This document shows positions 1 through 58,400 of a stretch of 64,000 bases of DNA, piece after piece. Within the stretch, counting starts at the first letter, position 1. Each line of letters starts with the position of its first letter. Source of the stretch: Mytilus edulis (taxonomy: Eukaryota); the NCBI RefSeq assembly GCF_963676685.1, contig NC_092352.1, positions 14,384,001 through 14,448,000 of the forward strand, written 5' to 3'. The position numbers and the translations under genes are program-made. The notes below the pieces were generated by a model that was not told the origin of the DNA, ran no database searches, and saw only the letters and a list, made by a program, of their open reading frames with translations.

Positions 1-477
1 TTTAGAAAGAGGTTTCGTGGAGCACTTGGAAGACCCAGCAATATACCGTTGTTTGTAAGGACACTTATGTAGTTTAGGTATCCAATACAGTGATGGAAGA
101 TCCAGTTCTTCATCTTTTGTTGAAATACCAAAGGAACAAAGAACAGACCTATGATTATCCAGGATTTCCTCTTTGGTAAGTGTCGTGAGGGTATATGTTG
201 AGTTTCCTAGTGAATTGTCTATACCTAATTCGTTTATCAAGCAATTAATATAGTGACTTTTACTGACAAAAACGATGTTATTTGGGACTTTGTCTGCGGG
301 GACAACAACATATTTATCATGGAGGTCGGATAAGTGTTTAGCAACATTTGGGTCTTTAAAGATTGACGTAGCATGGGCATTGATGGACCCATTCAGTTTC
401 TTGATTCTGATTTGTATTAACGACCTCACTGCCTTAATCCATTCGGATAGAGTGTCTACGTCTTCCTTTTCACGTTT
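1..477 (-). mobile_element. Penelope-like retroelement reverse transcriptase fragment (5'-truncated, runs off the window start)
   Basis: Stop-free minus-strand frame 477->1: KREKEDVDTLSEWIKAVRSLIQIRIKK...LHDKYVVVPADKVPNNIVFVSKSHYINCL...LPSLYWIPKLHKCPYKQRYIAGSSKCSTKPLSK. PADK and YWIPKLHK are characteristic of the N-terminal part of Penelope RTs. Confidence 0.85.
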
Positions 478-2572
478 AATAATATTCTCTAAAAGCTCCA
501 ATATTTTTATCCAAATTCGAAAGTATATTCAGATTCAGAAGATCCAGTTTAGTTTGGGACTTCAATATAACTTGATTTTTAGAGAATTGTTCTACTGCGT
601 TAGGTACAAGTAAAGAAAAGTAAGCCTTTTTTGAAGCAGATGTTTTGGCTATCTTTGACTTGCTTTGCAGAGAATTTACGGAATATTGTAACGAATGTGA
701 TGTCACTGCTGTAAATATTGGTAGCAAGAATACAGTCGTTGCCATGAAGAGAAACAAGAATCTATGTCCTATGAACACAAAAACTAAAGCTACTGCTATA
801 ACGGAAAATAAAGAATATCCCCACAAGTGGCGAAACGCGGAAACAAAATGATTTGAACGTTTAAATTCTTCTTCAACGGCGCTTTGAGGTATCCAGTGTG
901 TGTTGTTTGTTATAATTGCATGAAACGCACGACAGATCCTGACTGTACCAGTTACTGCTTCCGGTGTAAATTGCAAAATGGATGCTATCGTTTCTATAAT
1001 AACTATTTTATACGTTTTACTATTGCAAGTTGCGAACTTTGGAAATATGATTACTAGAAACATAGTCACCGATATAGAAGCATATTCATTTTTAAAAATG
1101 CCAAACATATGAACAATTAGAAATAGTAGCAAGAGCGGCTTTACAAACATTTGTCTCAGCGCACAATGAGCAATAAATGAAAATACAAAATCGTGTTTTG
1201 AAATTGTTCTTACTGTAGGTTCAACAAAGTTTTTCTGGAATTTTCTTTGCAGACATCTAAGAGGTTTTCCTAAAATCTTTGGCGAGTAATACATCGCTAA
1301 TAAAACCTCTCCTTTGTTCCATCTTCTTTCCCTTATACCCCATGTGACATAGTTATAGGGTGGAGCTTCCTTGAGCGGTATACTACCAACATACAAGACA
1401 TTCATAATAGATGCTTCAAAAGAGTCATGGCTGAGAACATCTATTGGTACACGTTCGATCAATTTCGCTTTATATCCGATTACTTTCTGAATGTATAATT
1501 TGTTATTTATTAACCCTTTCCCGAAAAAGGACGAATGATCGAAAAGAGCGGTCATAGCATTCGTCAATGGTAAGTTGATTACTTGTCGCATCGCGTCTAA
1601 ATGCATAAAAAGAGTGTCCCCTTTCTTACAATCAACCTCAATACCTGGTTGTATTATTCCACGATCCGGATTTCCGGCTGCCACATCCAATAGCTTGATA
1701 ACAGTACCCTCTGGAACTGTTGTGTCGCCATCCAGAACTAATGTATAGTCAAACCGTTTTCCCACAATTCTCCCCGTATCGGCGGAAGTTTCAAATAAAA
1801 GAACTCCATACGTGCGTGCGTAATCGTTATACAATTCTCGATCACAGTACGTGTAGGCTTTCGTTTCCCCCTCTGATAAAAGGATGAGATCTTGGTATTG
1901 GCCACATTTTCTCAAAACTTTTGATAGTCTGTGAACGACCATAAAATTGTCCATTCGCTCTTTACAAATACTGTGGATATGAAATGATTTTAACTCTTTC
2001 GTAACATAATCTCTATATGCACTCCAAAAATTTTGAAGACGAGGTCCATCAATTTCATTGTAGCGCATTTTGCAAAATGCCATGCCTTCGAGGTACAATT
2101 TAGAATATATCATTCTTCGAATGTCATCGCGAACATAGAGCTCATAATCCTTAAGTTTTACATCCTTCGTTGCACTGACTAGAACGGCTGCGACGTTTGC
2201 GTGTAAATTTCCCATATATGCCTCAAACATATTTTGCATACATTCGTCTATATCGTTTTCGCACGTGGCGAGAAGATTATAATTTAGTATCAATTTTAAT
2301 TTATGGTTCTTAGTAGAAACTGGTACTCGTCCATGTCCTCCAAGAGCAATACAAAATATTGTTTGCATGGGTATCTCTAATACGGTTCCCTGTAAAACCG
2401 CTAATAAAATAATCAAAATCACACCGGTGAGCCAATGGGAACGCTTCCAGTCAATGTTTAATGTATTTAAAACAATCGAAATAATTATGAAAAATATCCA
2501 AATTCCAAAATACAGAAAAAGTTTTAATTTATTTCCCATAGCTAAGTTAAACTCCTTAAATCTTTTATGCAA
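476..2572 (-). CDS. Intronless GT2-family membrane glucosyltransferase, OpgH/MdoH-like (beta-1,2-glucan synthase-type motifs), 698 aa
   Basis: Two N-terminal hydrophobic segments, a soluble GT-A domain and several C-terminal TM segments. Motifs RKCGQYQD, YTLVLDGDT (DxD), NPDRGIIQP, SFFGKG, VLSHDSFEA and EAPPYN...RERRWNKG correspond by eye to OpgH (RKSGN, VLDADS, GIIQ, LSHDFVEA, EELPPN..RDRRWC.G) and to the cyclic beta-1,2-glucan synthase GT domain. Confidence 0.8.
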   Translation of the reverse strand: MHKRFKEFNLAMGNKLKLFLYFGIWIFFIIISIVLNTLNIDWKRSHWLTGVILIILLAVLQGTVLEIPMQTIFCIALGGHGRVPVSTKNHKLKLILNYNLLATCENDIDECMQNMFEAYMGNLHANVAAVLVSATKDVKLKDYELYVRDDIRRMIYSKLYLEGMAFCKMRYNEIDGPRLQNFWSAYRDYVTKELKSFHIHSICKERMDNFMVVHRLSKVLRKCGQYQDLILLSEGETKAYTYCDRELYNDYARTYGVLLFETSADTGRIVGKRFDYTLVLDGDTTVPEGTVIKLLDVAAGNPDRGIIQPGIEVDCKKGDTLFMHLDAMRQVINLPLTNAMTALFDHSSFFGKGLINNKLYIQKVIGYKAKLIERVPIDVLSHDSFEASIMNVLYVGSIPLKEAPPYNYVTWGIRERRWNKGEVLLAMYYSPKILGKPLRCLQRKFQKNFVEPTVRTISKHDFVFSFIAHCALRQMFVKPLLLLFLIVHMFGIFKNEYASISVTMFLVIIFPKFATCNSKTYKIVIIETIASILQFTPEAVTGTVRICRAFHAIITNNTHWIPQSAVEEEFKRSNHFVSAFRHLWGYSLFSVIAVALVFVFIGHRFLFLFMATTVFLLPIFTAVTSHSLQYSVNSLQSKSKIAKTSASKKAYFSLLVPNAVEQFSKNQVILKSQTKLDLLNLNILSNLDKNIGAFREYY

Positions 2573-4682
2573 TAATGTTGTAATCCCTGAGATTTGAATT
2601 TTTTTTTTTAATGTCGATCAGAATGAACGATTGTGTATCAAGCTTCTTTTCAAAACGAAAGGGTTAGAAACTTGACAGCCAACGTGGACCTATAATCTCC
2701 TTATATCAGTCATTCCATTTGATATTTGATTCTGAATTGTCATATCTAGTCATAACTGGTGTTGATTTCAAAGTAGTATAAATTTAAAATGTCAACGCTT
2801 TGATTTCAGACGAATTTGTTTTGCTCGTTCTTTAATACTTGAAATGGGTAAGCGGTTTCGGAAAATAAGAAAAAAATGCTGTTGGCTTTTATTTATCAAA
2901 ACCAATTAAGTACAAAAATTCTATTACCAACTATATTCACCAAATGTTCAAATGATTTAGAAATAAAATAAAATGCCAAGACATAAAAATCATGTGTGTG
3001 GAGTATGGTTAAAACCTGTGGAAAAATAACCTTCAAACCGAAAAGGGATAGACATTTGGTAGCACCATTGCAATAATAAGTATTCATTTATTTGTGAAAA
3101 TATTTACAAGGTAAAACGGTAAAATAAACAGACTTCCTTTCTTTCAATGGTAACGTTTGATTTGAAAACTGTTAGTATCTTCAATCACTAACGTGTTATT
3201 ATGTCTACAAGTTTTCCCCCACATTCTCTGATTACATTAGCTCTAAACAGGAGTCTTTTGACATGAAACATGACAATCTTTAGGGAAGTTCCATCTCCGG
3301 TCCGGATTCTGTTCATCTATGGGGAGTAGGGATTTCTTATACCAGAACGGAATCTATCACTGCGCTGGATTGTTGATACATAGAAGTTAAGAAAAAGTTA
3401 AATAACAAAAATACCGAACTCTGAGGGAAATTCAAAGTGGAAAGTCCCTAATCAAGCGAATGGATAACAATTTGTTCTCTAAATGTAAGATAACTTTCTC
3501 GATTTTGATCACATGATGAATTTTGTTACTAATTGAATAAAAACGTAATTGCAGTAGAAGACATGAACATGTACTACCAACAAGAAGACAACGACAACAT
3601 TCGTGACCGATTCCAGACTTATAATACTAACGTTGATTAACATATATTTTCAATCTATAATATGAAATTAAACAGACCTAAAAACAAAATGCAGTTGCAC
3701 GAGTCCGCTTTCTATTTATATCTAAATTTATGTTTATATTGCTTATATGACCATCAGATGTCTTCTGAGGTCAACTCGAAAGTTAATTATTTGACGTTAA
3801 GACTAAAATTTACACGAAACGAAGCTACATGTTATTGAGCTCATGACCTGTAAATTGTTTATTATAGATTTTTTATAATTTGAATAAATGTTTTACGTGG
3901 TTATAAATCAAATATATAAATTCGAGTCAAATCGGTGAACATGAATTTAACAGCTAGTGCTCTTTTAAATTTCTATCCATTCGACCTGTAAATGACTAAG
4001 GAAAATTCAAAAAAAATATATCGTCTATGATATATAGGGTAAGGTATTGTTTTTGTGGGTTTTCTTTTATCATTAATGGTTATCAGTTTAGTGGCTGTAA
4101 TGATATACATTCATCTTTTTGTATATTTGTTACATAACTTGTACTTATGAAATAAGAAATATGAAATACTAGTATGTTTCTCTTATCGTTGCTATCAGTG
4201 AATTAAATATCAGTCCCTACTTTGCATAAGATAAAGGATAAGAATAGGAATGTGTCAAAGATACAACACACTATGTTATTATCAAGTTATGATCTCACGA
4301 TATGCATGGTGCAAAATTGGGGTGAAATCTCTATATAATTTGTTACTATAATAAATTTAATATTAAGGAGAACACAAACGAGAAATATTTTTCAAATGTA
4401 GCATCATTTAAAAAAATCTGGTTTCCTTTTTAGTTTAATGCTTTAATTTCCAAAGACGGCAAAGAAGACAACAGTGAAGACACACTAGAATCTCCATTGT
4501 TTGTAAAACAATTGAAAGGTCTTTCCTGTAAAAGTGATGTTTTCGTAATGTGCTGTGTACGACCTTTCGTTTGATAAACGATAAGCATACCTTCTGAAAC
4601 TTTTCGCTTTTTACATTTAATGACCTCATCGGCTTCATTTTTGAGATCGGAAGTATGATATATGTAACACAGGGTAGAGGAG

Positions 4683-20259: not shown

Positions 20260-23108
20260 TTAAATAACTAATTTGTTCAGTAATTCTTCAGCAAAGCGTG
20301 CCATTTCATTCAAACATTCACACTGTGCTTTGTATATATGCAGGTTGACGATTTTATTCAGGGTGTATGTGTGAAGTAGATTGACCTCTGGAATAAAGAA
20401 CACAGGCATACTCTGATTTTCAACACAGAAAAGCATTCTTCTAGTTATTTTGTATGCCCAAGCGGTTGCTGAATCCCCATCCGGTTCAACAGTTGAGTGT
20501 TCATTTGAATTGTATTGATCTAAATAAATTTCTAGTTCGTAGAGAAAGCATGATTTCAACATGTATGTAGTAAGATATTCTACGCTTGGTTCATCGTCAT
20601 CGTCTTTGTCCCAAACAGTTGGGAAATATTCGGATTTGTGTAATGCTTTCACCAGAATGTACCCTTTTCGTATTGACGGTGTCATGCTTCTTATGATATC
20701 GGCCTCGACGTCTGCTGTCGATATTCTGAGAAGTATATTCCAATCTCTAAACACCTCCGAGGCAGGAGTTTTGAACACAACTGAATAATTTGGTTCCAAA
20801 TGTAACTGATTCATTAAATTGTTGTGCAAGTTTATGGTTTTTGGTAGCCATTTTGTTGGTTCTACAACAGGAACAATGTCTACAGATATATCAAGATCCT
20901 TAAATGATTTACCAGTCCATCGAAAATTTATATTAGAAATCGAACCTTTGTGTAGATCAAGAAAGGATTTCAGATAAAGATTTGTACTTGTAAGAACATC
21001 ATTATTCAACAAAGCCAAGTTTATGGCTGAATACAAGCTTCTGACGACCTTCATGCTATCGATGAAGCCATTTTCATCCACGTATTTTTGTAACAGCTTA
21101 CTATTTGCACCACCTTTTAGCTTGAGTTTAACAAAACCTTTCGGAAAATCGGGAAGCTCTATTGGCTCTACGTGTTCACTAAATTTTAGTAGATGCCATT
21201 TGATATCAAATTCGTCATTTTGTCCTATCTTTGTTCCTTCTTTTCTACTTCCTGACAGTGTAACATTACATTCAAGAATAGGGTTTGTCATTTTCACATA
21301 CTGAGCTAGGCTTTTCATAATATTTTCAATAGATAATGCAATATCATGGTTTTCATCAGTGTAATAGTATAACCCCATGTCACAAGAATCGCGAATTAAA
21401 CCAGCAAATTTGCCAAAAGCGTCCTTATGGTCTTGTAAATGTAATTTCCATTCACTGATATTTAGTTCATTATCACAACATTTTAATATATTCAAGAAAG
21501 GGCACCCGCCAAATATGTTTTCTTTGCATATACATTCTCTGTTTTCAAACTTGTTATCCGTCATACGCTCATGTGTATGTTGCACATGGATAATGTTATA
21601 TGGTTCTTCTTCGGGCATATTCTGACTTTTACCGAAAGCCTGAAGACAGACTCCAAGGTCGCTTGCACTTGCACCTGCAGACTTATAAGTTTTATATGGA
21701 GTAATCAGTTGATATAACATATATTCATAATTAAGGAATTTTGCATAATCTATTGGATTTCTACCGTCTGAATTTTCAACGACAGGATCGAATCCTCTGT
21801 TTAAAAGCATTGAAAATGAACCATTATCCTGATACCATATCGCCCAATGAAAAAACGTAGAGCCAAAATTATCCTGGATGTTGACAATACTAGAACAATG
21901 TGTTTCCAATATAATCTCTAAAATTTCAGGATGTTTACTCGCTATGTGACATGATGTTTCTCCTGTTTTCGCTTTAGCAGTTGGATCTGCGCCAAGTTTC
22001 AATAATATCTCAACTAGATGCTTTCTCCCCTTTTGAACAGCATAGTGTAAAGGTGTCAAACTTTGGAGATTTGTCTCGTTTACATTTAATCCTCGATTAA
22101 CAAGAAACTTGACAATTTGGATTATTTCGTTATCTCTTGATTCGAGTTCATCGTCTTCAGCGTTTTCGATTGGGTCATCTGGAGGTGACATAATCATATG
22201 AAGTACAGTGGATCCCATTTTATCCCTTTTCCTAAAATCCATCCCTTTCTTTAGCAGGTGTTGTACATGATTCAGTTGGACCTTGTCGGAAAACATTATC
22301 TGATGGAGTAAACTTTGTCCAAAACCATCCTCCATGTTTACATCCAGTCCATATTTCATTAGACAATCAATTGATTCTTTGAAACCTTCATAACTTGGAT
22401 TTTCTGACAAATAATGAAGTGCTGATTCATCATAAATATTTACGTCATATGGGTGTGCTCCGTTTTCTAATAAAAAATATATTGCTTGGTCACAACATAC
22501 TGATGCAGCATAAATAAGCGGTGTCATTTTGGTTAAATCTTTACTATTCACAGATGCACCCGCTGTAATAATCGCTGCAAAAAATCTACGCAATTATGAT
22601 TTTCACTTTTAGATGACTGTTCTTCTTCAGAAGGATGAATGACATGTATAAAGTGAATCGGACATTTCCCTTCCGGATTAGGAGATAAAACATCTTTGGA
22701 GAGTTCAAGCAGTCTACTGATTCTTGTATAACACCTACCCTCTCCAATCGTTGTACAGTCTTTAAAAAGACTCAAGAGAGCATTTTCACCCGACACGTTG
22801 CAAAAGTTCACGTCTGCTCCATGATCAATTAAAAGTTCAAATATCTTAATATCGACATCGTCGTAGAGAGCCATGAATAACGGAGTTTTACCATCTTTAT
22901 CTGGAATATTAGGATCGGCCCCATGTCGAAACAAGATGTTTACTATTTCTATTTCGTTATTACATACGGCAACATACAGAGGTGTCGTATCCAATCCAGA
23001 TCTATTTTCGGCGTGATTTACATTTGCCCCGTCATCTAATAACTTACTCACGTCTTTTCTTCTTCCTTCCACAACTGCATTAATAAGGCTACACTCCTTA
23101 CTTTGCAT
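20260..23108 (-). CDS. Ankyrin-repeat + Mab-21/cGAS-like nucleotidyltransferase (cGLR), ~949 aa if a 1-nt frameshift at 22579-22584 is corrected
   Basis: ORFs 22548-23108 and 20260-22593 join (…CVDFFAAIITAGASVNSKD…) by adding one T to a T6 run. About 12-13 ANK repeats (TPLYVAV, TPLFMAL, TPLIYAA, TPLHYAV...). NTase motifs SGSRKEG...DEFD and VDIVP; Mab-21 C-lobe motifs RISTADVE, TTYMLKS and PVFFIPEVNLL. A splice acceptor TATTTTTAG lies ~31 nt upstream of the ATG. Confidence 0.9.
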
Positions 23109-55400: not shown

Positions 55401-58400
55401 TCGTTTGGGGGTTGACTGCCGATGCGACATATATGTCGTTTAATTGGTTTTAATAAAACAATCATATTTTATTTCTTTTTATCTTTTATGCTTTTGATAT
55501 TCTTATATAATATATACATTGTTGTTTTGAATTCATTATGACGTAATACGTTAAGTATATATGACGTCATAAATGTCAAAAGATCGTCTGTACTGTTCCC
55601 GACATAGCTATGGAAGACAGTGACGGTGACATAACAGACATAGTAACTTCGGGCGACGAAGATTCTGACGATGCTGATGTTGAAATGCCAGACAATGCTG
55701 CAAGACAGCCTAACCCTTGGTTTTCTGTGGTAGACAAAGAAACGTTTGAGCTAGACGTTAATCGTGATTTCGAAGAACGGATTGGGCCGTGTGGATTTGA
55801 AGCCAATTTTTCACCGGTGGATTACTTTGATAAATTTTTGAAAACAGAAGATGATGACTTGATTGATCGCATTGTAGATGAAACAAATAGGTACATTATT
55901 GGTTTTATATGTTTCAAATTATAACGTTCTTAATTTTCTTTGAATGTATATTTATATGTTTCCGTAATATAATTGCGGTCTACAAATCAATTTTCAAAGT
56001 ATTCTAATAATTAAATAACGCTCCAAAAGATAGCAGAGACATTTTTTCACAACATTAATTTAAAAGTTCTTGCTACCCTCCCACCCCCCCCCCCCCCCCC
56101 CCTCATCCAACAAAAACACCAGTAATCCTGTATATCCAATAACATATAACTGGTTTTGTCAACAGGTATGCCAACCAGTGCCAAACTACAGAGAATCCAA
56201 CAAGACATGCCAGATCAAACGAATGGTCACCAGTTAGCTATGCTGAGATGAGAGCCTTTATTGGTCTTGTTCTCGCGATGGGTATCGTAAAGAAATCCTC
56301 CATTGAAAGCTATTGGGAAGCGTCTGGTATCTCTGAAACCCCAAATTTCAGGGATGTGATGTCCAGAAATAGATTTCAGGCAATACTGAGATATCTGCAT
56401 TGCAGCAACAATACAACAGCAGTTCCAAGAGGTCAGCCAGGATACGACCCCCTCCACAAGATAAATCCAGTTGTTGAATTCTTCAATGAAGTGTTCGAAC
56501 TTAATTATAGGTAAATGTCAACTCAAATATAGAAATATACACAAGCCATTACGCGGTCATGTTTCCATGTTAAAAATAAACATAATTTATTGCTGGAACT
56601 GAGACGAATTTTGTCCTAATCATATTTTCCACTGCATACTAACTGTCATTGATTTAACACTGGTACCTCTTGTTTCGGGAAAGATAAGAGTAAAAAAAAA
56701 TCAATGTAATCAAAATTGTACAATCTGGTTATGTCGTTCATTATAAAATTCTAAAATATACATATTATTTTTTAATGTATTTTTTTTTTAATTGAGACAA
56801 GACTTGTTGTAAATAGATTTTACGGATTTTCAGACTATCTCAAAACATAGTTGTGGATGAGAGAATAGTTGGTTTCAAAGGGCGTCATGTTTTGAAACAA
56901 TACATTTCAAACAAGAAGGCACACAGATGGGGAGCAAAGTTGTTCGTCTTAGCTGAATCCAGAACAGGTTATACCCATCAGATAAATGTGTACAAAGGGA
57001 AACGAAATACAGAACGCCATCCCAATGGACAAGGGTAAGTGAAAAAAAGGGGGTGGTAACTCTGGATTTTCAGGTTTAGCGAAAATGCCAAAATAATATC
57101 GGCGAGATAATTTTTATGAAAATACCTTATCGGAAAAGAACACGAAAAATATTACTTTAATTGACTCAAATTAACATGATTGTTTCTGTAAATCGATGGC
57201 GACTGTATTGCGAATGAATATGACAATCCATGAAAGTAGACCAAAATTTACGCACATCTCCAGGTTTATACAGGGTATAACTTAATGACGCTGTTAATTA
57301 AGAAATGCCTACTTCTTATAATCAAGTAAGGCCGAATATAAGACTCGCATATTTAACATTTTGACTTGATAAAAAGTTCTAATTCTTACCTATTTCTATC
57401 TAATCGTTTCATTTTGTTATTGTCGGTTTTCCTTTTATTTTTTTTCGTCATGATTATACATGCAATATTTGTGACTGGACAAACACTCAAGCAATCAATC
57501 AATTTTTTTTATAGATATAAATCGGTAATGGATTTAGTACGTCCTCATTTTGGCAAAAACCATCATGTAACTATGGATAATTGGTTTTCATCACCTAAAC
57601 TGATGAACGACCTAAGGAACCGGGGAACAAATGCAACAGGAACTGTAATAGCAAGACGGAAGGGCTTACCTGCAAGTTTTAAAACAGCTCGGCTTCCCAA
57701 AGGAAGTGTTGTTGTTAAATCACAGAGAGGTCTTTTGGCTATTTTGTACGTAGATCGGAGAAATGTGACTTTCCTGACAACAAGTGAAAATGCACGGTAA
57801 GTTTCTTGTTTTTCAACCCAGCTTTGTCCGATAGGCCAATCCCTATATAATTTGACAATACTTGACTTTTAAAATAAAAAGTTATTAAAATACAACGTTG
57901 TCAAAAAAATACTTACATCGTGGAATATATGAAATACTTTCTTACACAATGTCAAAATTAACTATACAACAAAGTACAAGCTTGAAGTAACAGTCATGGC
58001 TAATAAAATTATAATATCACCAAAGTAAACATACAATAAAACAAGTCTTACTTAATATACTTTTCAGAACTGTGCGAAAAGTTAATAGTAAAGGTAGAGT
58101 TGTGTCTGCTCCAAGTGTTGTCCACAAATACAACCAGACCATGGGCGGTGTCGATCTTGGGGATCAGCTTTTGCTTAAATTTGAGCCACAATTTAAAGGT
58201 GTGAAACTCTGGAGAAAAATTCTCTTCAACCTTCTTACTACAGCTACAGGTATGTCTCATCTTAAACATTTGCAAGCTTTTTTAGTTGTCAATTCAAAGC
58301 CTAACTAAAAGACTATGTGCTTATGTTCAGTTGCAAATATTTCATGCATTGCCTAGAACAAGGATAAGTTGATATAAGTACCACGTATGATTTTTTTCAC

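What the first reader, a model, noticed from the sequence alone, without database searches (positions are those of the whole stretch)
476..2572. Bacterial-type OpgH/beta-1,2-glucan synthase-like gene sitting intact and intronless in an animal chromosome
Seen: a 698-aa uninterrupted ORF with OpgH-like topology and all catalytic-type motifs (DxD, LSHD, RxRRW), flanked by animal repeats on the same sequence as intron-rich COPS3 and NT5M, and AT-rich like its surroundings. Known: OpgH/MdoH and cyclic beta-1,2-glucan synthases make bacterial periplasmic glucans, and this is not a standard metazoan GT2 (chitin and hyaluronan synthases use GED/QRRRW-type motifs). Inference: a horizontally acquired, domesticated glucan synthase that could give the animal an undescribed beta-glucan pathway (osmotic, shell/mucus or microbial-interaction role).
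Basis: partly seen in the sequence, partly recalled or inferred. Interest (0 to 1): 0.85.

Follow-up and report, generated by a model that had tools for sequence, protein, structure and literature searches.

The report
Mussel OpgH/Cgs-like membrane glycosyltransferase gene
A mussel chromosome carries an intact, intron-free, selectively maintained gene for a membrane sugar-polymerising enzyme that distantly resembles bacterial periplasmic-glucan synthases. It belongs to a small, old family shared by molluscs, acorn worms, a ribbon worm, protists and giant viruses, so it is not a recent bacterial import.

Summary
The ORF is real: window 476-2572, minus strand. The likely CDS is 687 aa, starting at the ATG at 2539. 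It sits in a Mytilus (edulis-type) chromosome beside a retroelement and animal genes.

It is a true but remote homolog of bacterial OpgH (hhalign 97%, E 1e-10). [quoted passage not shown] The DxD, SHD (catalytic base) and RW motifs are conserved. The first UDP-binding Asp is Ala or Val in all 22 aligned members.

It is not a recent bacterial acquisition:
- None of 185,579 prokaryote genomes has the family signatures.
- Only 375 of 1.84 billion protein representatives match the family profile.
- Named members are bivalves, gastropods, cephalopods, hemichordates, a nemertean, dinoflagellates, an ichthyosporean and giant viruses.
- Protist members are fused to ABC, MFS or formin domains.

Mytilus has at least four intronless paralogs. 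Against its tandem copy the window gene gives dN/dS 0.15.

The origin (ancient eukaryote/virus exchange or vertical descent with losses) is unresolved by AU tests. NCBI already labels some orthologs "glucans biosynthesis glucosyltransferase H-like", but I found no study of them.

The parts
476..2539 (-). Probable CDS (687 aa + stop) of the OpgH/Cgs-like membrane glycosyltransferase. ATG at 2539-2537, TAA at 478-476.
   Evidence: ORF list. N-terminus aligns with the Met of homologs. Confident AF2 model, pLDDT 82.9. 99.6% identical to M. edulis CAG2214284.
2540..2572 (-). In-frame upstream extension from a TTG (11 codons), probably 5' UTR and not coding.
   Evidence: Homologs start at the aligned Met. 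The tandem copy has a TAG in this stretch yet keeps the rest of the frame.
2168..2176 (-). Codons S122-A123-T124 at the end of beta-strand 2. Ala replaces the first UDP-coordinating Asp (Cgs D527, OpgH 'LSDS').
   Evidence: phmmer alignment to Cgs, with a numbering offset of 19 verified on D739 and R773. The block is SAT, SVT or SAS in all 22 aligned members.
1886..1909 (-). Invariant KCGQYQDL block (K211-L218), the family signature. It probably corresponds to OpgH 'KSGNIDDF' and BcsA 'KAGN'.
   Evidence: Invariant columns. Used as the scan pattern that found no prokaryote. The correspondence to KAGN is my inference from motif position.
1724..1732 (-). DxD motif (D270-G-D272), the metal/UDP-binding site.
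   Evidence: Invariant in the family. Aligned to OpgH 'DAD' by hhalign. Equivalent to Cgs D624/D626.
1424..1432 (-). S370-H371-D372. D372 is the predicted catalytic base (Cgs D739).
   Evidence: Alignments to Cgs and OpgH. Residue role from the Cgs paper PMC10901819.
1316..1333 (-). R403-E-R-R406-W407-N408, the 'RW' acceptor-binding motif (Cgs R773).
476..679 (-). C-terminal tail (residues ~620-687), poorly conserved and predicted disordered.
   Evidence: pLDDT below 50 for residues 620-687. The tail is variable in the alignment. It is shared with the tandem copy up to the stop codon.
2573..3313 (-). About 740 nt of upstream sequence duplicated together with the gene; putative promoter and 5' UTR.
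   Evidence: BLASTN homology with the tandem copy spans window 3313-479 at 89-95% identity. A promoter function was not tested.
1..477 (-). Start of a reverse-transcriptase-bearing retroelement ORF (at least 499 codons, continuing beyond the window). It abuts the GT stop codon, in the same orientation and another frame.
   Evidence: Translation of L001:1-1499 is open and contains a YIDD RT motif. Homology between the two tandem GT copies ends at the stop codon. No Pfam hit for the first 159 aa alone.

Best explanation
Window 476-2539 (minus strand) is a functional Mytilus gene. [quoted passage not shown]

Shown:
- It belongs to a small, sharply delimited family found only in eukaryotes and giant viruses. 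Named members are bivalves, gastropods, cephalopods, hemichordates, a nemertean, dinoflagellates and an ichthyosporean.
- It is one of at least four intronless Mytilus paralogs.
- It is under purifying selection.
- The family is older than the split of the mollusc classes and has no close bacterial member.

Inferred mechanism:
- The cytosolic GT domain binds a nucleotide sugar through the DxD motif, most likely UDP-glucose by analogy with OpgH and Cgs. It uses D372 (SHD) as the base and the RW motif to hold the acceptor.
- It builds a beta-linked gluco-oligo- or polysaccharide, perhaps beta-1,2, at the membrane face.
- The product is passed through or along the TM bundle, or handed to a separate exporter. 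The ABC and MFS fusions in protist members point to an exporter, echoing the bacterial Cgs-Cgt (synthase-ABC exporter) pair.

The family-wide Asp-to-Ala change at the first UDP-binding position means that donor binding differs in detail from OpgH and Cgs.

Origin: an ancient event. It was either exchange among eukaryotes, with giant viruses as plausible vehicles, or vertical descent with many losses. It was not a recent bacterial transfer.
For: Homology and fold:
- NCBIfam matches only MdoH models, weakly.
- hhalign of the family against E. coli OpgH gives 97%, E 1e-10.
- 26 of 30 ESM Atlas neighbours are OpgH/MdoH clusters.
- The AF2 model (pLDDT 82.9) matches Cgs 8rf9 at Foldseek E 8e-17 and VIA Z 24.5, rmsd 3.3 A, 505 residues, model 1-624 on Cgs 402-988. 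BcsA scores Z 18 and HAS Z 15.

Catalytic residues: mapped through the Cgs paper.

Family limits:
- 73 invariant columns across 22 diverse members.
- 375 hits in 1.84e9 representatives.
- No prokaryote among 185,579 species carries the signatures.

Taxa:
- The giant-virus contigs carry NCLDV capsid and topoisomerase II genes.
- Fusions to ABC, MFS, FH2 and a second GT2 domain occur in protist members.

Gene status:
- Paralogs in the genome are single open frames of 719 and 672 codons.
- Against the tandem copy, dS is 0.126, dN 0.019 and omega 0.15 over 685 codons.
- Both tandem loci are annotated in M. edulis.
- Chromosomal animal context.

Phylogeny.
Against:
- The sugar donor, linkage and processivity are inferred only from remote relatives at 14-21% identity.
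- The first UDP-coordinating Asp is missing family-wide, so the donor or binding mode may differ.
- No OpgG/MdoG partner is detectable in the genome.
- The Cgs cyclase and GH94 domains are absent.
- No conserved Tyr is evident at the Cgs Y694 primer position.
- A retroelement sits directly after the stop codon and could disturb 3' processing of this copy.
- The window paralog lies on a long branch (0.5-0.6 substitutions per site).
- Most non-animal members are unnamed metagenome proteins, so the taxon range is incompletely known.
Confidence: 0.75

Rival explanations
1. One reading: a bacterial opgH/cgs-type gene transferred directly from a bacterium into this animal lineage and then domesticated.
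For: - Remote homology to OpgH and Cgs is real.
- The gene is intronless in an intron-rich genome.
- A true bacterium-to-eukaryote OpgH transfer is documented in Verticillium and Fusarium (PMC3145793).
Against: - No signature match in 185,579 prokaryote species.
- Only about 25 bits against MdoH models with cut-offs of 328-1131.
- About 20% identity to E. coli OpgH.
- The profile finds only 375 proteins in 1.84e9, and every member whose source could be identified is eukaryotic or giant-viral. Most of the 375 are unnamed and the hits beyond rank 150 were never seen.
- The gene is shared at 50-57% identity by all major mollusc classes and at 44-48% by hemichordates.
- If a bacterial ancestor existed, it predates the whole eukaryote/virus family.
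Confidence: 0.05
2. Origin by horizontal transfer among eukaryotes. Molluscs, hemichordates and nemerteans (or an early ancestor of some of them) received the gene from protists or giant viruses, or the reverse, and it has since been kept intronless.
For: - The distribution is very patchy. The named animal hits are only molluscs, hemichordates and a nemertean.
- Full-length members lie on bona fide giant-virus contigs.
- In the free trees a protist clade groups with the molluscs to the exclusion of hemichordates (SH-aLRT 93 and 98).
- All four Mytilus copies are intronless.
Against: - AU tests do not reject mollusc monophyly (p 0.76) or a mollusc+hemichordate clade (p 0.82).
- The viruses branch outside the core family, not next to the animals.
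- The root rests on long branches.
- Most protist sequences are unnamed.
Confidence: 0.45
3. Vertical inheritance. An ancient eukaryotic (or at least bilaterian) gene was retained in a few marine phyla and lost from most animals.
For: - Animal monophyly is not rejected.
- An ichthyosporean (holozoan) has a distant member.
- Hemichordates form one clade, and gastropods and cephalopods form clades within the mollusc sequences.
Against: - It requires very many independent losses.
- Old animal genes are rarely intronless across all paralogs.
- The ichthyosporean sequence belongs to the divergent tier-2 group, not next to the animals.
- The nemertean sequence does not group with the molluscs.
Confidence: 0.3
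4. The enzyme is active but does not make a beta-1,2-glucan. It uses another donor or makes another product, such as a different beta-glycan, a glycolipid or a protein-linked glycan. Alternatively it is a non-processive transferase.
For: - The first UDP-binding Asp is replaced family-wide, and the 'KAGN'-type block is altered to KCGQYQ.
- A helical insert of about 130 residues lies between beta-strand 2 and the DxD strand, absent from OpgH.
- There is no OpgG partner.
- There are no cyclase or phosphorylase domains.
- Some protist and viral members carry, or sit near, a second GT2.
Against: - The two nearest characterised relatives, OpgH and Cgs, both use UDP-Glc and make beta-1,2 chains (established knowledge; PMC10901819).
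- The FFGKG and RW motifs typical of processive enzymes are kept.
- The full TM-GT-TM module superposes on Cgs.
Confidence: 0.4
5. Artefact: bacterial contamination, a chimeric assembly, or a decaying pseudogene.
For: - This assembly's tandem copy has a 31-nt frameshifting deletion.
- A retroelement abuts the gene.
Against: - The gene lies 14.4 Mb into a chromosome-scale contig of a 1.37-Gb genome.
- Coding density is eukaryotic, with 5 long ORFs in 64 kb.
- Animal genes and transposons flank it.
- Orthologs lie on chromosome-scale scaffolds of more than 20 molluscs.
- Omega is 0.15.
- All 73 family-invariant residues are retained.
- The same two loci are annotated in independent M. edulis assemblies, without the deletion.
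Confidence: 0.02

Closest known systems
[quoted passage not shown]
   Same: - Best structural match: Z 24.5, rmsd 3.3 A, 505 aligned residues, model 1-624 on Cgs 402-988; Foldseek E 8e-17.
- Same TM-GT-TM module.
- DxD, catalytic Asp in 'SHD' and the RW motif are at matching positions.
- Protist members are fused to ABC exporters, recalling the separate Cgs-Cgt synthase/exporter pair.
   Different: - Only 14-16% identity.
- Lacks the N-terminal domain, the cyclase domain and the GH94 phosphorylase half (687 aa against about 2,800).
- The equivalent of Cgs D527 is Ala.
- No conserved Tyr at the Y694 primer site.
- Eukaryotic or viral host.
OpgH/MdoH, the osmoregulated periplasmic glucan glucosyltransferase of Proteobacteria (GT2; NCBIfam PRK05454 models)
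   Same: - The only sequence-family match.
- hhalign 97%, E 1e-10 over 337 columns, covering the GT core from the DxD motif onward and the C-terminal TM helices.
- Similar size and topology.
- The motif series 'VLDxD', 'NP..GIIQ', 'SHDxxEA' and 'R.RRW..G' is shared.
- The ESM Atlas neighbours are OpgH clusters.
   Different: - About 25 bits against cut-offs of 328-1131 bits.
- About 20% identity.
- First UDP-binding Asp ('LSDS') replaced by 'SAT'.
- A helical insert of about 130 residues follows beta-strand 2.
- No OpgG partner in the genome.
- No prokaryotic members of the clade.
Fungal OpgH homologs of Verticillium, Fusarium oxysporum and Metarhizium (VDAG_02071; PMC3145793)
   Same: An OpgH-type glucosyltransferase residing in a eukaryotic genome. 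The knock-out shows a biological role, reduced virulence.
   Different: The fungal genes are close relatives of Rhizobiales OpgH, a clear recent bacterial transfer. The mussel family has no close bacterial relative and is far older and wider.
Animal processive GT2 synthases (hyaluronan synthase, chitin synthase) and cellulose synthases (BcsA/CesA)
   Same: The same superfamily architecture: a GT-A domain docked under a TM bundle, with DxD, a catalytic Asp and the RW motif. Z is 15-18.
   Different: - Clearly weaker matches: Foldseek TMq 0.25-0.48, E 1e-9 to 1e-5.
- No Pfam chitin-synthase, HAS or cellulose-synthase hit.
- Different motif spelling: SHD, not (G/T)ED.

Membership tests
OpgH/MdoH (NCBIfam PRK05454 equivalogs; GT2) | Whole-protein score above the curated model cut-off | tested here: not met
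   The best hit is 25.3 bits against a cut-off of 419. Eight MdoH models were hit, all far below their cut-offs. The same holds for the paralog L004 at 33.9 bits.
OpgH/MdoH (NCBIfam PRK05454 equivalogs; GT2) | GT-A core with DxD, a catalytic Asp ('SHD') and the R-W motif | tested here: met
   D270/D272, D372 and R406-W407 are invariant in the family and aligned to the OpgH equivalents.
OpgH/MdoH (NCBIfam PRK05454 equivalogs; GT2) | First UDP-coordinating Asp at the end of beta-strand 2 ('LSDS' in OpgH, D527 in Cgs, D179 in BcsA) | tested here: not met
   Ala123 in 'LVSAT'. The block is SAT, SVT or SAS in all 22 aligned members. The Cgs numbering was verified through D739 and R773.
OpgH/MdoH (NCBIfam PRK05454 equivalogs; GT2) | N-terminal TM helices, a large cytoplasmic GT domain and a C-terminal TM bundle | tested here: met
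   Hydropathy analysis and the AF2 secondary structure.
OpgH/MdoH (NCBIfam PRK05454 equivalogs; GT2) | Works with a periplasmic OpgG/MdoG partner (opgGH operon) | tested here: not met
   PF04349 finds nothing in the 1.37-Gb genome, while the control finds E. coli. Exon-split genes could be missed.
OpgH/MdoH (NCBIfam PRK05454 equivalogs; GT2) | UDP-glucose-dependent synthesis of a beta-1,2-glucan backbone | not testable with these tools
   Needs biochemistry.
[quoted passage not shown] | GT84-type modified GT2 fold docked under six TM helices | tested here: met
   Z 24.5, 505 aligned residues, rmsd 3.3 A, covering Cgs 402-988. Foldseek E 8e-17.
[quoted passage not shown] | Cyclase domain and C-terminal GH94 phosphorylase domain | tested here: not met
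   The protein ends at 687 aa. It has no Pfam domains, and the structural match stops at Cgs residue 988.
[quoted passage not shown] | Tyr (Y694) in the IF1-homology loop carrying the covalently linked glucan primer | tested here: inconclusive
   Extrapolating the alignment puts Y694 near residue 321, which is Ile. No family-conserved Tyr lies there. The alignment is weak in this loop.
Animal GT2 polymer synthases (hyaluronan synthase, chitin synthase) | Match to the HAS or chitin-synthase sequence families, or best structural match to them | tested here: not met
   No Pfam hit. HAS scores Z 15 and the chitin synthases Foldseek TMq 0.25-0.29, well below Cgs.
Eukaryote/giant-virus OpgH-like clade (unnamed; defined here) | Signature blocks NYNLLA, LVSAT, KCGQYQDL, LVLDxDT, IIQP, FFGKGL, VPxDVLSHDTFEA, RERRWNxGE, QFTPE and W.PQ | tested here: met
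   The window protein keeps all 73 invariant columns. It scores 1044 bits on the family HMM and nests in the bivalve part of the tree.

The most novel reading that the evidence does not exclude
Molluscs, hemichordates and nemerteans synthesise a beta-1,2-type (OPG- or cyclic-glucan-like) glucan using an enzyme family that has moved among marine eukaryotes on giant viruses. This would be the first animal beta-1,2-glucan synthase. It would also define a previously unrecognised eukaryote/giant-virus branch of the OpgH/Cgs superfamily with a non-canonical donor site (Ala in place of the first UDP-binding Asp).
Probability: 0.3. Interest if true: 0.8.

Novelty: new variant of a known kind. Interest (0 to 1): 0.55.

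Why it matters
Beta-1,2-glucans and their synthases are regarded as essentially bacterial, with roles in osmoadaptation, symbiosis and virulence. A conserved, multi-copy, selectively constrained relative in molluscs, hemichordates and a nemertean points to an unstudied glycan pathway in marine animals. Its presence in dinoflagellates and giant viruses, with fusions to exporters in protists, adds a concrete case for asking how membrane glycan synthases spread among eukaryotes and viruses. The family-wide loss of a canonical UDP-binding Asp makes it an informative test of GT2/GT84 donor recognition. It also corrects the automatic label 'glucans biosynthesis glucosyltransferase H-like', which suggests an orthology that is not there.

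Tried and rejected
- Pfam on the ORF gave no hit.
- PDB sequence search gave only marginal Cgs hits at E 0.1. The Ras/TTC21B hits are noise.
- The first literature query was too loose. Later queries found no paper on the animal family, on beta-1,2-glucan in molluscs or on giant-virus members.
- The genome-contig scan with the family signatures found no prokaryote.
- The PCI and NT5C family searches did not land in the window, so COPS3 and NT5M are unverified.
- Greedy hhalign of the N-terminal GT half against OpgH was unreliable, with confidence near 0. I therefore used the Cgs alignment, with verified numbering, for the first Asp.
- The mixture-model AU test did not finish and was redone with LG+G4 on 40 rows. 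The 'careful' tree also did not finish, so the quick PMSF tree is reported.
- An E. coli locus could not be used as the centre for a survey of bacterial genomes.
- One paper query was rejected for syntax, and one Pfam call was over the size limit.
- Considered and rejected: contamination, a chance ORF, a pseudogene, chitin or hyaluronan synthase, and true OpgH orthology.
Full report
**Observation**

The minus strand of window 476-2572 holds an uninterrupted frame of 698 codons beginning at a TTG. The first ATG is codon 12 (window 2539). It coincides with the N-terminal Met of homologs in the family alignment, so the likely CDS is 687 aa at window 2539-476. The whole 64-kb window contains only five ORFs of at least 130 aa. 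That is the coding density of an intron-rich eukaryotic chromosome, and it makes a 698-codon frame in 35% GC DNA far beyond chance. GC is 34-41% in the ORF and 25-37% in the flanks.

**Identity of the host**

The window is G000:C9:14384001-14448000 of a 1.37-Gb genome. The 96%-identity protein cluster contains Mytilus edulis, M. trossulus and M. coruscus entries. The window protein is 99.6% identical to M. edulis CAG2214284.

The context is animal:
- A reverse-transcriptase ORF of at least 499 codons, with a YIDD motif, starts right after the stop codon.
- An ankyrin+Mab21 gene lies at 20260-23108 and a piggyBac transposase fragment at 57366-57800.

PCI and NT5C model searches did not land in the window, but that test is weak for exon-split genes.

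**What the protein is**

Sequence evidence:
- Pfam finds nothing.
- NCBIfam finds only MdoH/OpgH models, at 11-25 bits against cut-offs of 328-1131.
- A profile of 22 family members aligns to E. coli OpgH with 97% probability, E 1e-10, over 337 columns. These cover the GT core from the DxD motif onward and the C-terminal helices.
- 26 of 30 ESM Atlas neighbours are OpgH/MdoH clusters.

Structural evidence:
- An AlphaFold2 model built from the family alignment is confident: pLDDT 82.9, pTM 0.80, with only the tail (residues 620-687) disordered.
[quoted passage not shown] Foldseek gives E 8e-17 and TMq 0.59. VIA-align gives Z 24.5, rmsd 3.3 A and 505 residues, with model 1-624 on Cgs 402-988.
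- Cellulose synthase BcsA follows at Z about 18 and hyaluronan synthases at about 15. Chitin synthases are weaker still, at Foldseek TMq 0.25-0.29.
- Hydropathy and the model show 2 N-terminal TM helices, a cytosolic GT domain and a C-terminal TM bundle.

**Catalytic residues**

The Cgs structure paper (PMC10901819) names four residues: D527 and D624 as UDP ligands, D739 as the catalytic base, and R773 of the RW motif. In the alignment the PDB chain numbering is offset by 19 from the paper's numbering, and I checked that offset on both D739 and R773.

The mapping onto the mussel protein is:
- D739 corresponds to D372 (SHD).
- R773 corresponds to R406 (RERRWN).
- The DxD motif corresponds to D270/D272.
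- D527 corresponds to A123.

The 'LVSAT' block is SAT, SVT or SAS in all 22 aligned members. Three of the four signature positions are therefore conserved, and the first UDP-binding Asp is replaced family-wide. No conserved Tyr is evident at the Cgs Y694 primer position, although the alignment there is weak.

**The family and its range**

The gene is not peculiar to this animal. The search for homologous proteins returned homologs as follows:
- 50-57% identity in bivalves: Sinanodonta, Potamilus, Mya, Dreissena, Mactra, Mercenaria, Mizuhopecten, Pinctada, Saccostrea, Argopecten.
- 50-57% identity in gastropods: Haliotis, Patella, Lottia, Littorina, Babylonia, Nucella, Batillaria.
- 50-57% identity in cephalopods: Argonauta, Octopus.
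- 44-48% identity in hemichordates: Saccoglossus, Glandiceps, Ptychodera.
- About 40% identity in longer proteins from other sources.

Several of the mollusc proteins are already named 'glucans biosynthesis glucosyltransferase H-like' by NCBI. They are often in tandem arrays on chromosome-scale scaffolds.

The more distant members that could be identified are all eukaryotic or viral:
- The dinoflagellates Biecheleria and Noctiluca and the ichthyosporean Chromosphaera.
- A divergent member in the nemertean Tubulanus.
- Protist members fused to ABC-exporter, MFS, formin FH2 or a second GT2 domain. Some carry two or three tandem copies of the module.
- A deep, AT-rich group encoded on giant-virus metagenome-assembled genomes. 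These contigs also carry NCLDV major capsid protein, topoisomerase II and DUF5755 genes. One viral protein is 34% identical to the mussel protein over 616 residues, with all signatures kept.

Two results bound the family:
- A profile search of 1.84 billion representative proteins found only 375 hits at E<=1e-3.
- A scan of 185,579 prokaryote species genomes for the KCGQYQDL and VP[IV]DVLSHD signatures found none.

The family is therefore a discrete eukaryote + giant-virus clade. It is related to bacterial OpgH and Cgs only at superfamily distance.

**Phylogeny**

I built a 175-row tree and a 58-row mixture-model tree. Both show:
- Giant viruses as a separate clade (support 100).
- A divergent 'tier-2' eukaryote group and the nemertean branching deep.
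- Hemichordates as one clade (support 99).
- A set uniting all molluscs with a protist clade (support 93 and 98), with poor resolution inside it.
- Old mollusc paralog lineages.

The window gene sits in a Mytilus-only group on a long stem (0.5-0.6 substitutions per site). It is sister to the Mytilus paralog on C4:86.59 Mb and to a Pinctada gene. The third Mytilus paralog groups with oyster, scallop and pearl-oyster genes.

AU tests (LG+G4, 40 rows) reject neither mollusc monophyly (p 0.76) nor a mollusc+hemichordate clade against protists and viruses (p 0.82). The number and direction of transfers are therefore unresolved. What is clear is that the gene predates the divergence of the mollusc classes.

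**Gene status in Mytilus**

The genome has at least four copies, all single open frames:
- The window gene.
- A tandem copy about 53 kb away on the same contig.
- Two paralogs on contig C4, at 56% and 51% identity, with open frames of 719 and 672 codons.
- A short remnant is also present.

The tandem copy shares 89-95% nucleotide identity from about 740 nt upstream of the CDS to exactly the stop codon. Over 685 codons dS is 0.126, dN is 0.019 and omega is 0.15, which indicates strong purifying selection.

The copy's 'TAG' lies upstream of the real ATG. Its only lesion is a 31-nt deletion at codon ~570. The matching M. edulis protein CAG2222194 and a Logan-derived protein run on intact past that point. 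The deletion is therefore haplotype-specific or an assembly slip.

**Mechanism (inferred)**

By analogy with OpgH and Cgs, the cytosolic GT-A domain should transfer sugar from a nucleotide donor, most likely UDP-Glc, with inversion. It would build a beta-linked chain held by the FFGKG and RW motifs at the membrane face.

The ABC and MFS fusions in protists suggest that the product is exported by a dedicated transporter, as in the bacterial Cgs-Cgt pair. In molluscs the enzyme is stand-alone.

Several features warn that donor binding, product or partners may differ:
- The missing first Asp.
- The altered KAGN-type block (KCGQYQ).
- A helical insert of about 130 residues after beta-strand 2.
- The absence of an OpgG homolog.
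- The absence of the cyclase and GH94 domains.

I put about 40-50% on a beta-1,2-type glucan product.

**Comparison with what is known, and novelty**

The only described eukaryotic OpgH case I found is in Verticillium, Fusarium and Metarhizium. It is a recent transfer from Rhizobiales (PMC3145793) and a different situation. No paper in the searchable library treats the animal, protist or giant-virus family. Automatic annotation has noticed the OpgH resemblance.

I class this as a new variant of a known kind: a distinct eukaryote/giant-virus branch of the OpgH/Cgs-type membrane glycan synthases. It is not a recent bacterial import.

**Limits**

- Most non-animal members are unnamed.
- The tree roots rest on long branches.

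Noticed in passing
G000:C9:14330475-14332534 (locus L002), about 53 kb from the window gene: A tandem paralog with 95% nucleotide identity from 740 nt upstream to the stop codon. In this assembly it carries a 31-nt frameshifting deletion at codon ~570. The matching M. edulis protein CAG2222194 and a Logan protein are intact past that point, so the lesion is haplotype-specific or an assembly slip.
   Followed up: yes
window 1-477 (-), continuing in L001:1-1499 (-): A retroelement ORF of at least 499 codons with a YIDD reverse-transcriptase motif begins immediately after the GT stop codon. It has the same orientation but another frame, and may have replaced the original 3' UTR of this copy.
   Followed up: partly
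window 20260-23108 (-): Two adjoining ORFs (777 and 186 aa) with ankyrin repeats plus Mab-21 nucleotidyltransferase and Mab-21_C domains: a cGAS-like receptor gene, as another first-stage note says. The catalytic residues were not checked.
   Followed up: partly
window 57366-57800 (+): A 144-aa ORF matching the piggyBac-type transposase family DDE_Tnp_1_7 (E 6e-17); a transposon fragment.
   Followed up: no
L010 (GVMAG-M-3300005613-11) and L011 (IMGVR 3300017730_002450): Two giant-virus contigs share the gene order topoisomerase II, OpgH/Cgs-like GT, unknown ORF, DUF5755, AAA ATPase, GT2, major capsid protein. The GT is therefore a stable part of these viral genomes.
   Followed up: partly
proteins P0150, P0151, P0152, P0153, P0157, P0160, P0077: Protist (metagenome or transcriptome) members carry 2-3 tandem copies of the GT module and/or fusions to ABC exporter, MFS transporter or formin FH2 domains. 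This is 'Rosetta stone' evidence for coupling to export and to the cytoskeleton.
   Followed up: partly
protein P0225 (3289 aa, on a 144.5-kb JGI contig): A very large protein combining a classical GT2 domain (PF00535) with a divergent copy of this family's module. The source organism is unknown; it could be a giant virus, a protist or a bacterium.
   Followed up: no
G000:C4:86715474-86715653 (L006): A short fragment (58 aa, 40% identity) of the family near the C4 paralog; probably a decayed duplicate.
   Followed up: no
window 275-613 (+): A 112-aa ORF antisense to the 3' end of the GT gene and the retroelement junction. It has a low-complexity translation and is most likely spurious.
   Followed up: no
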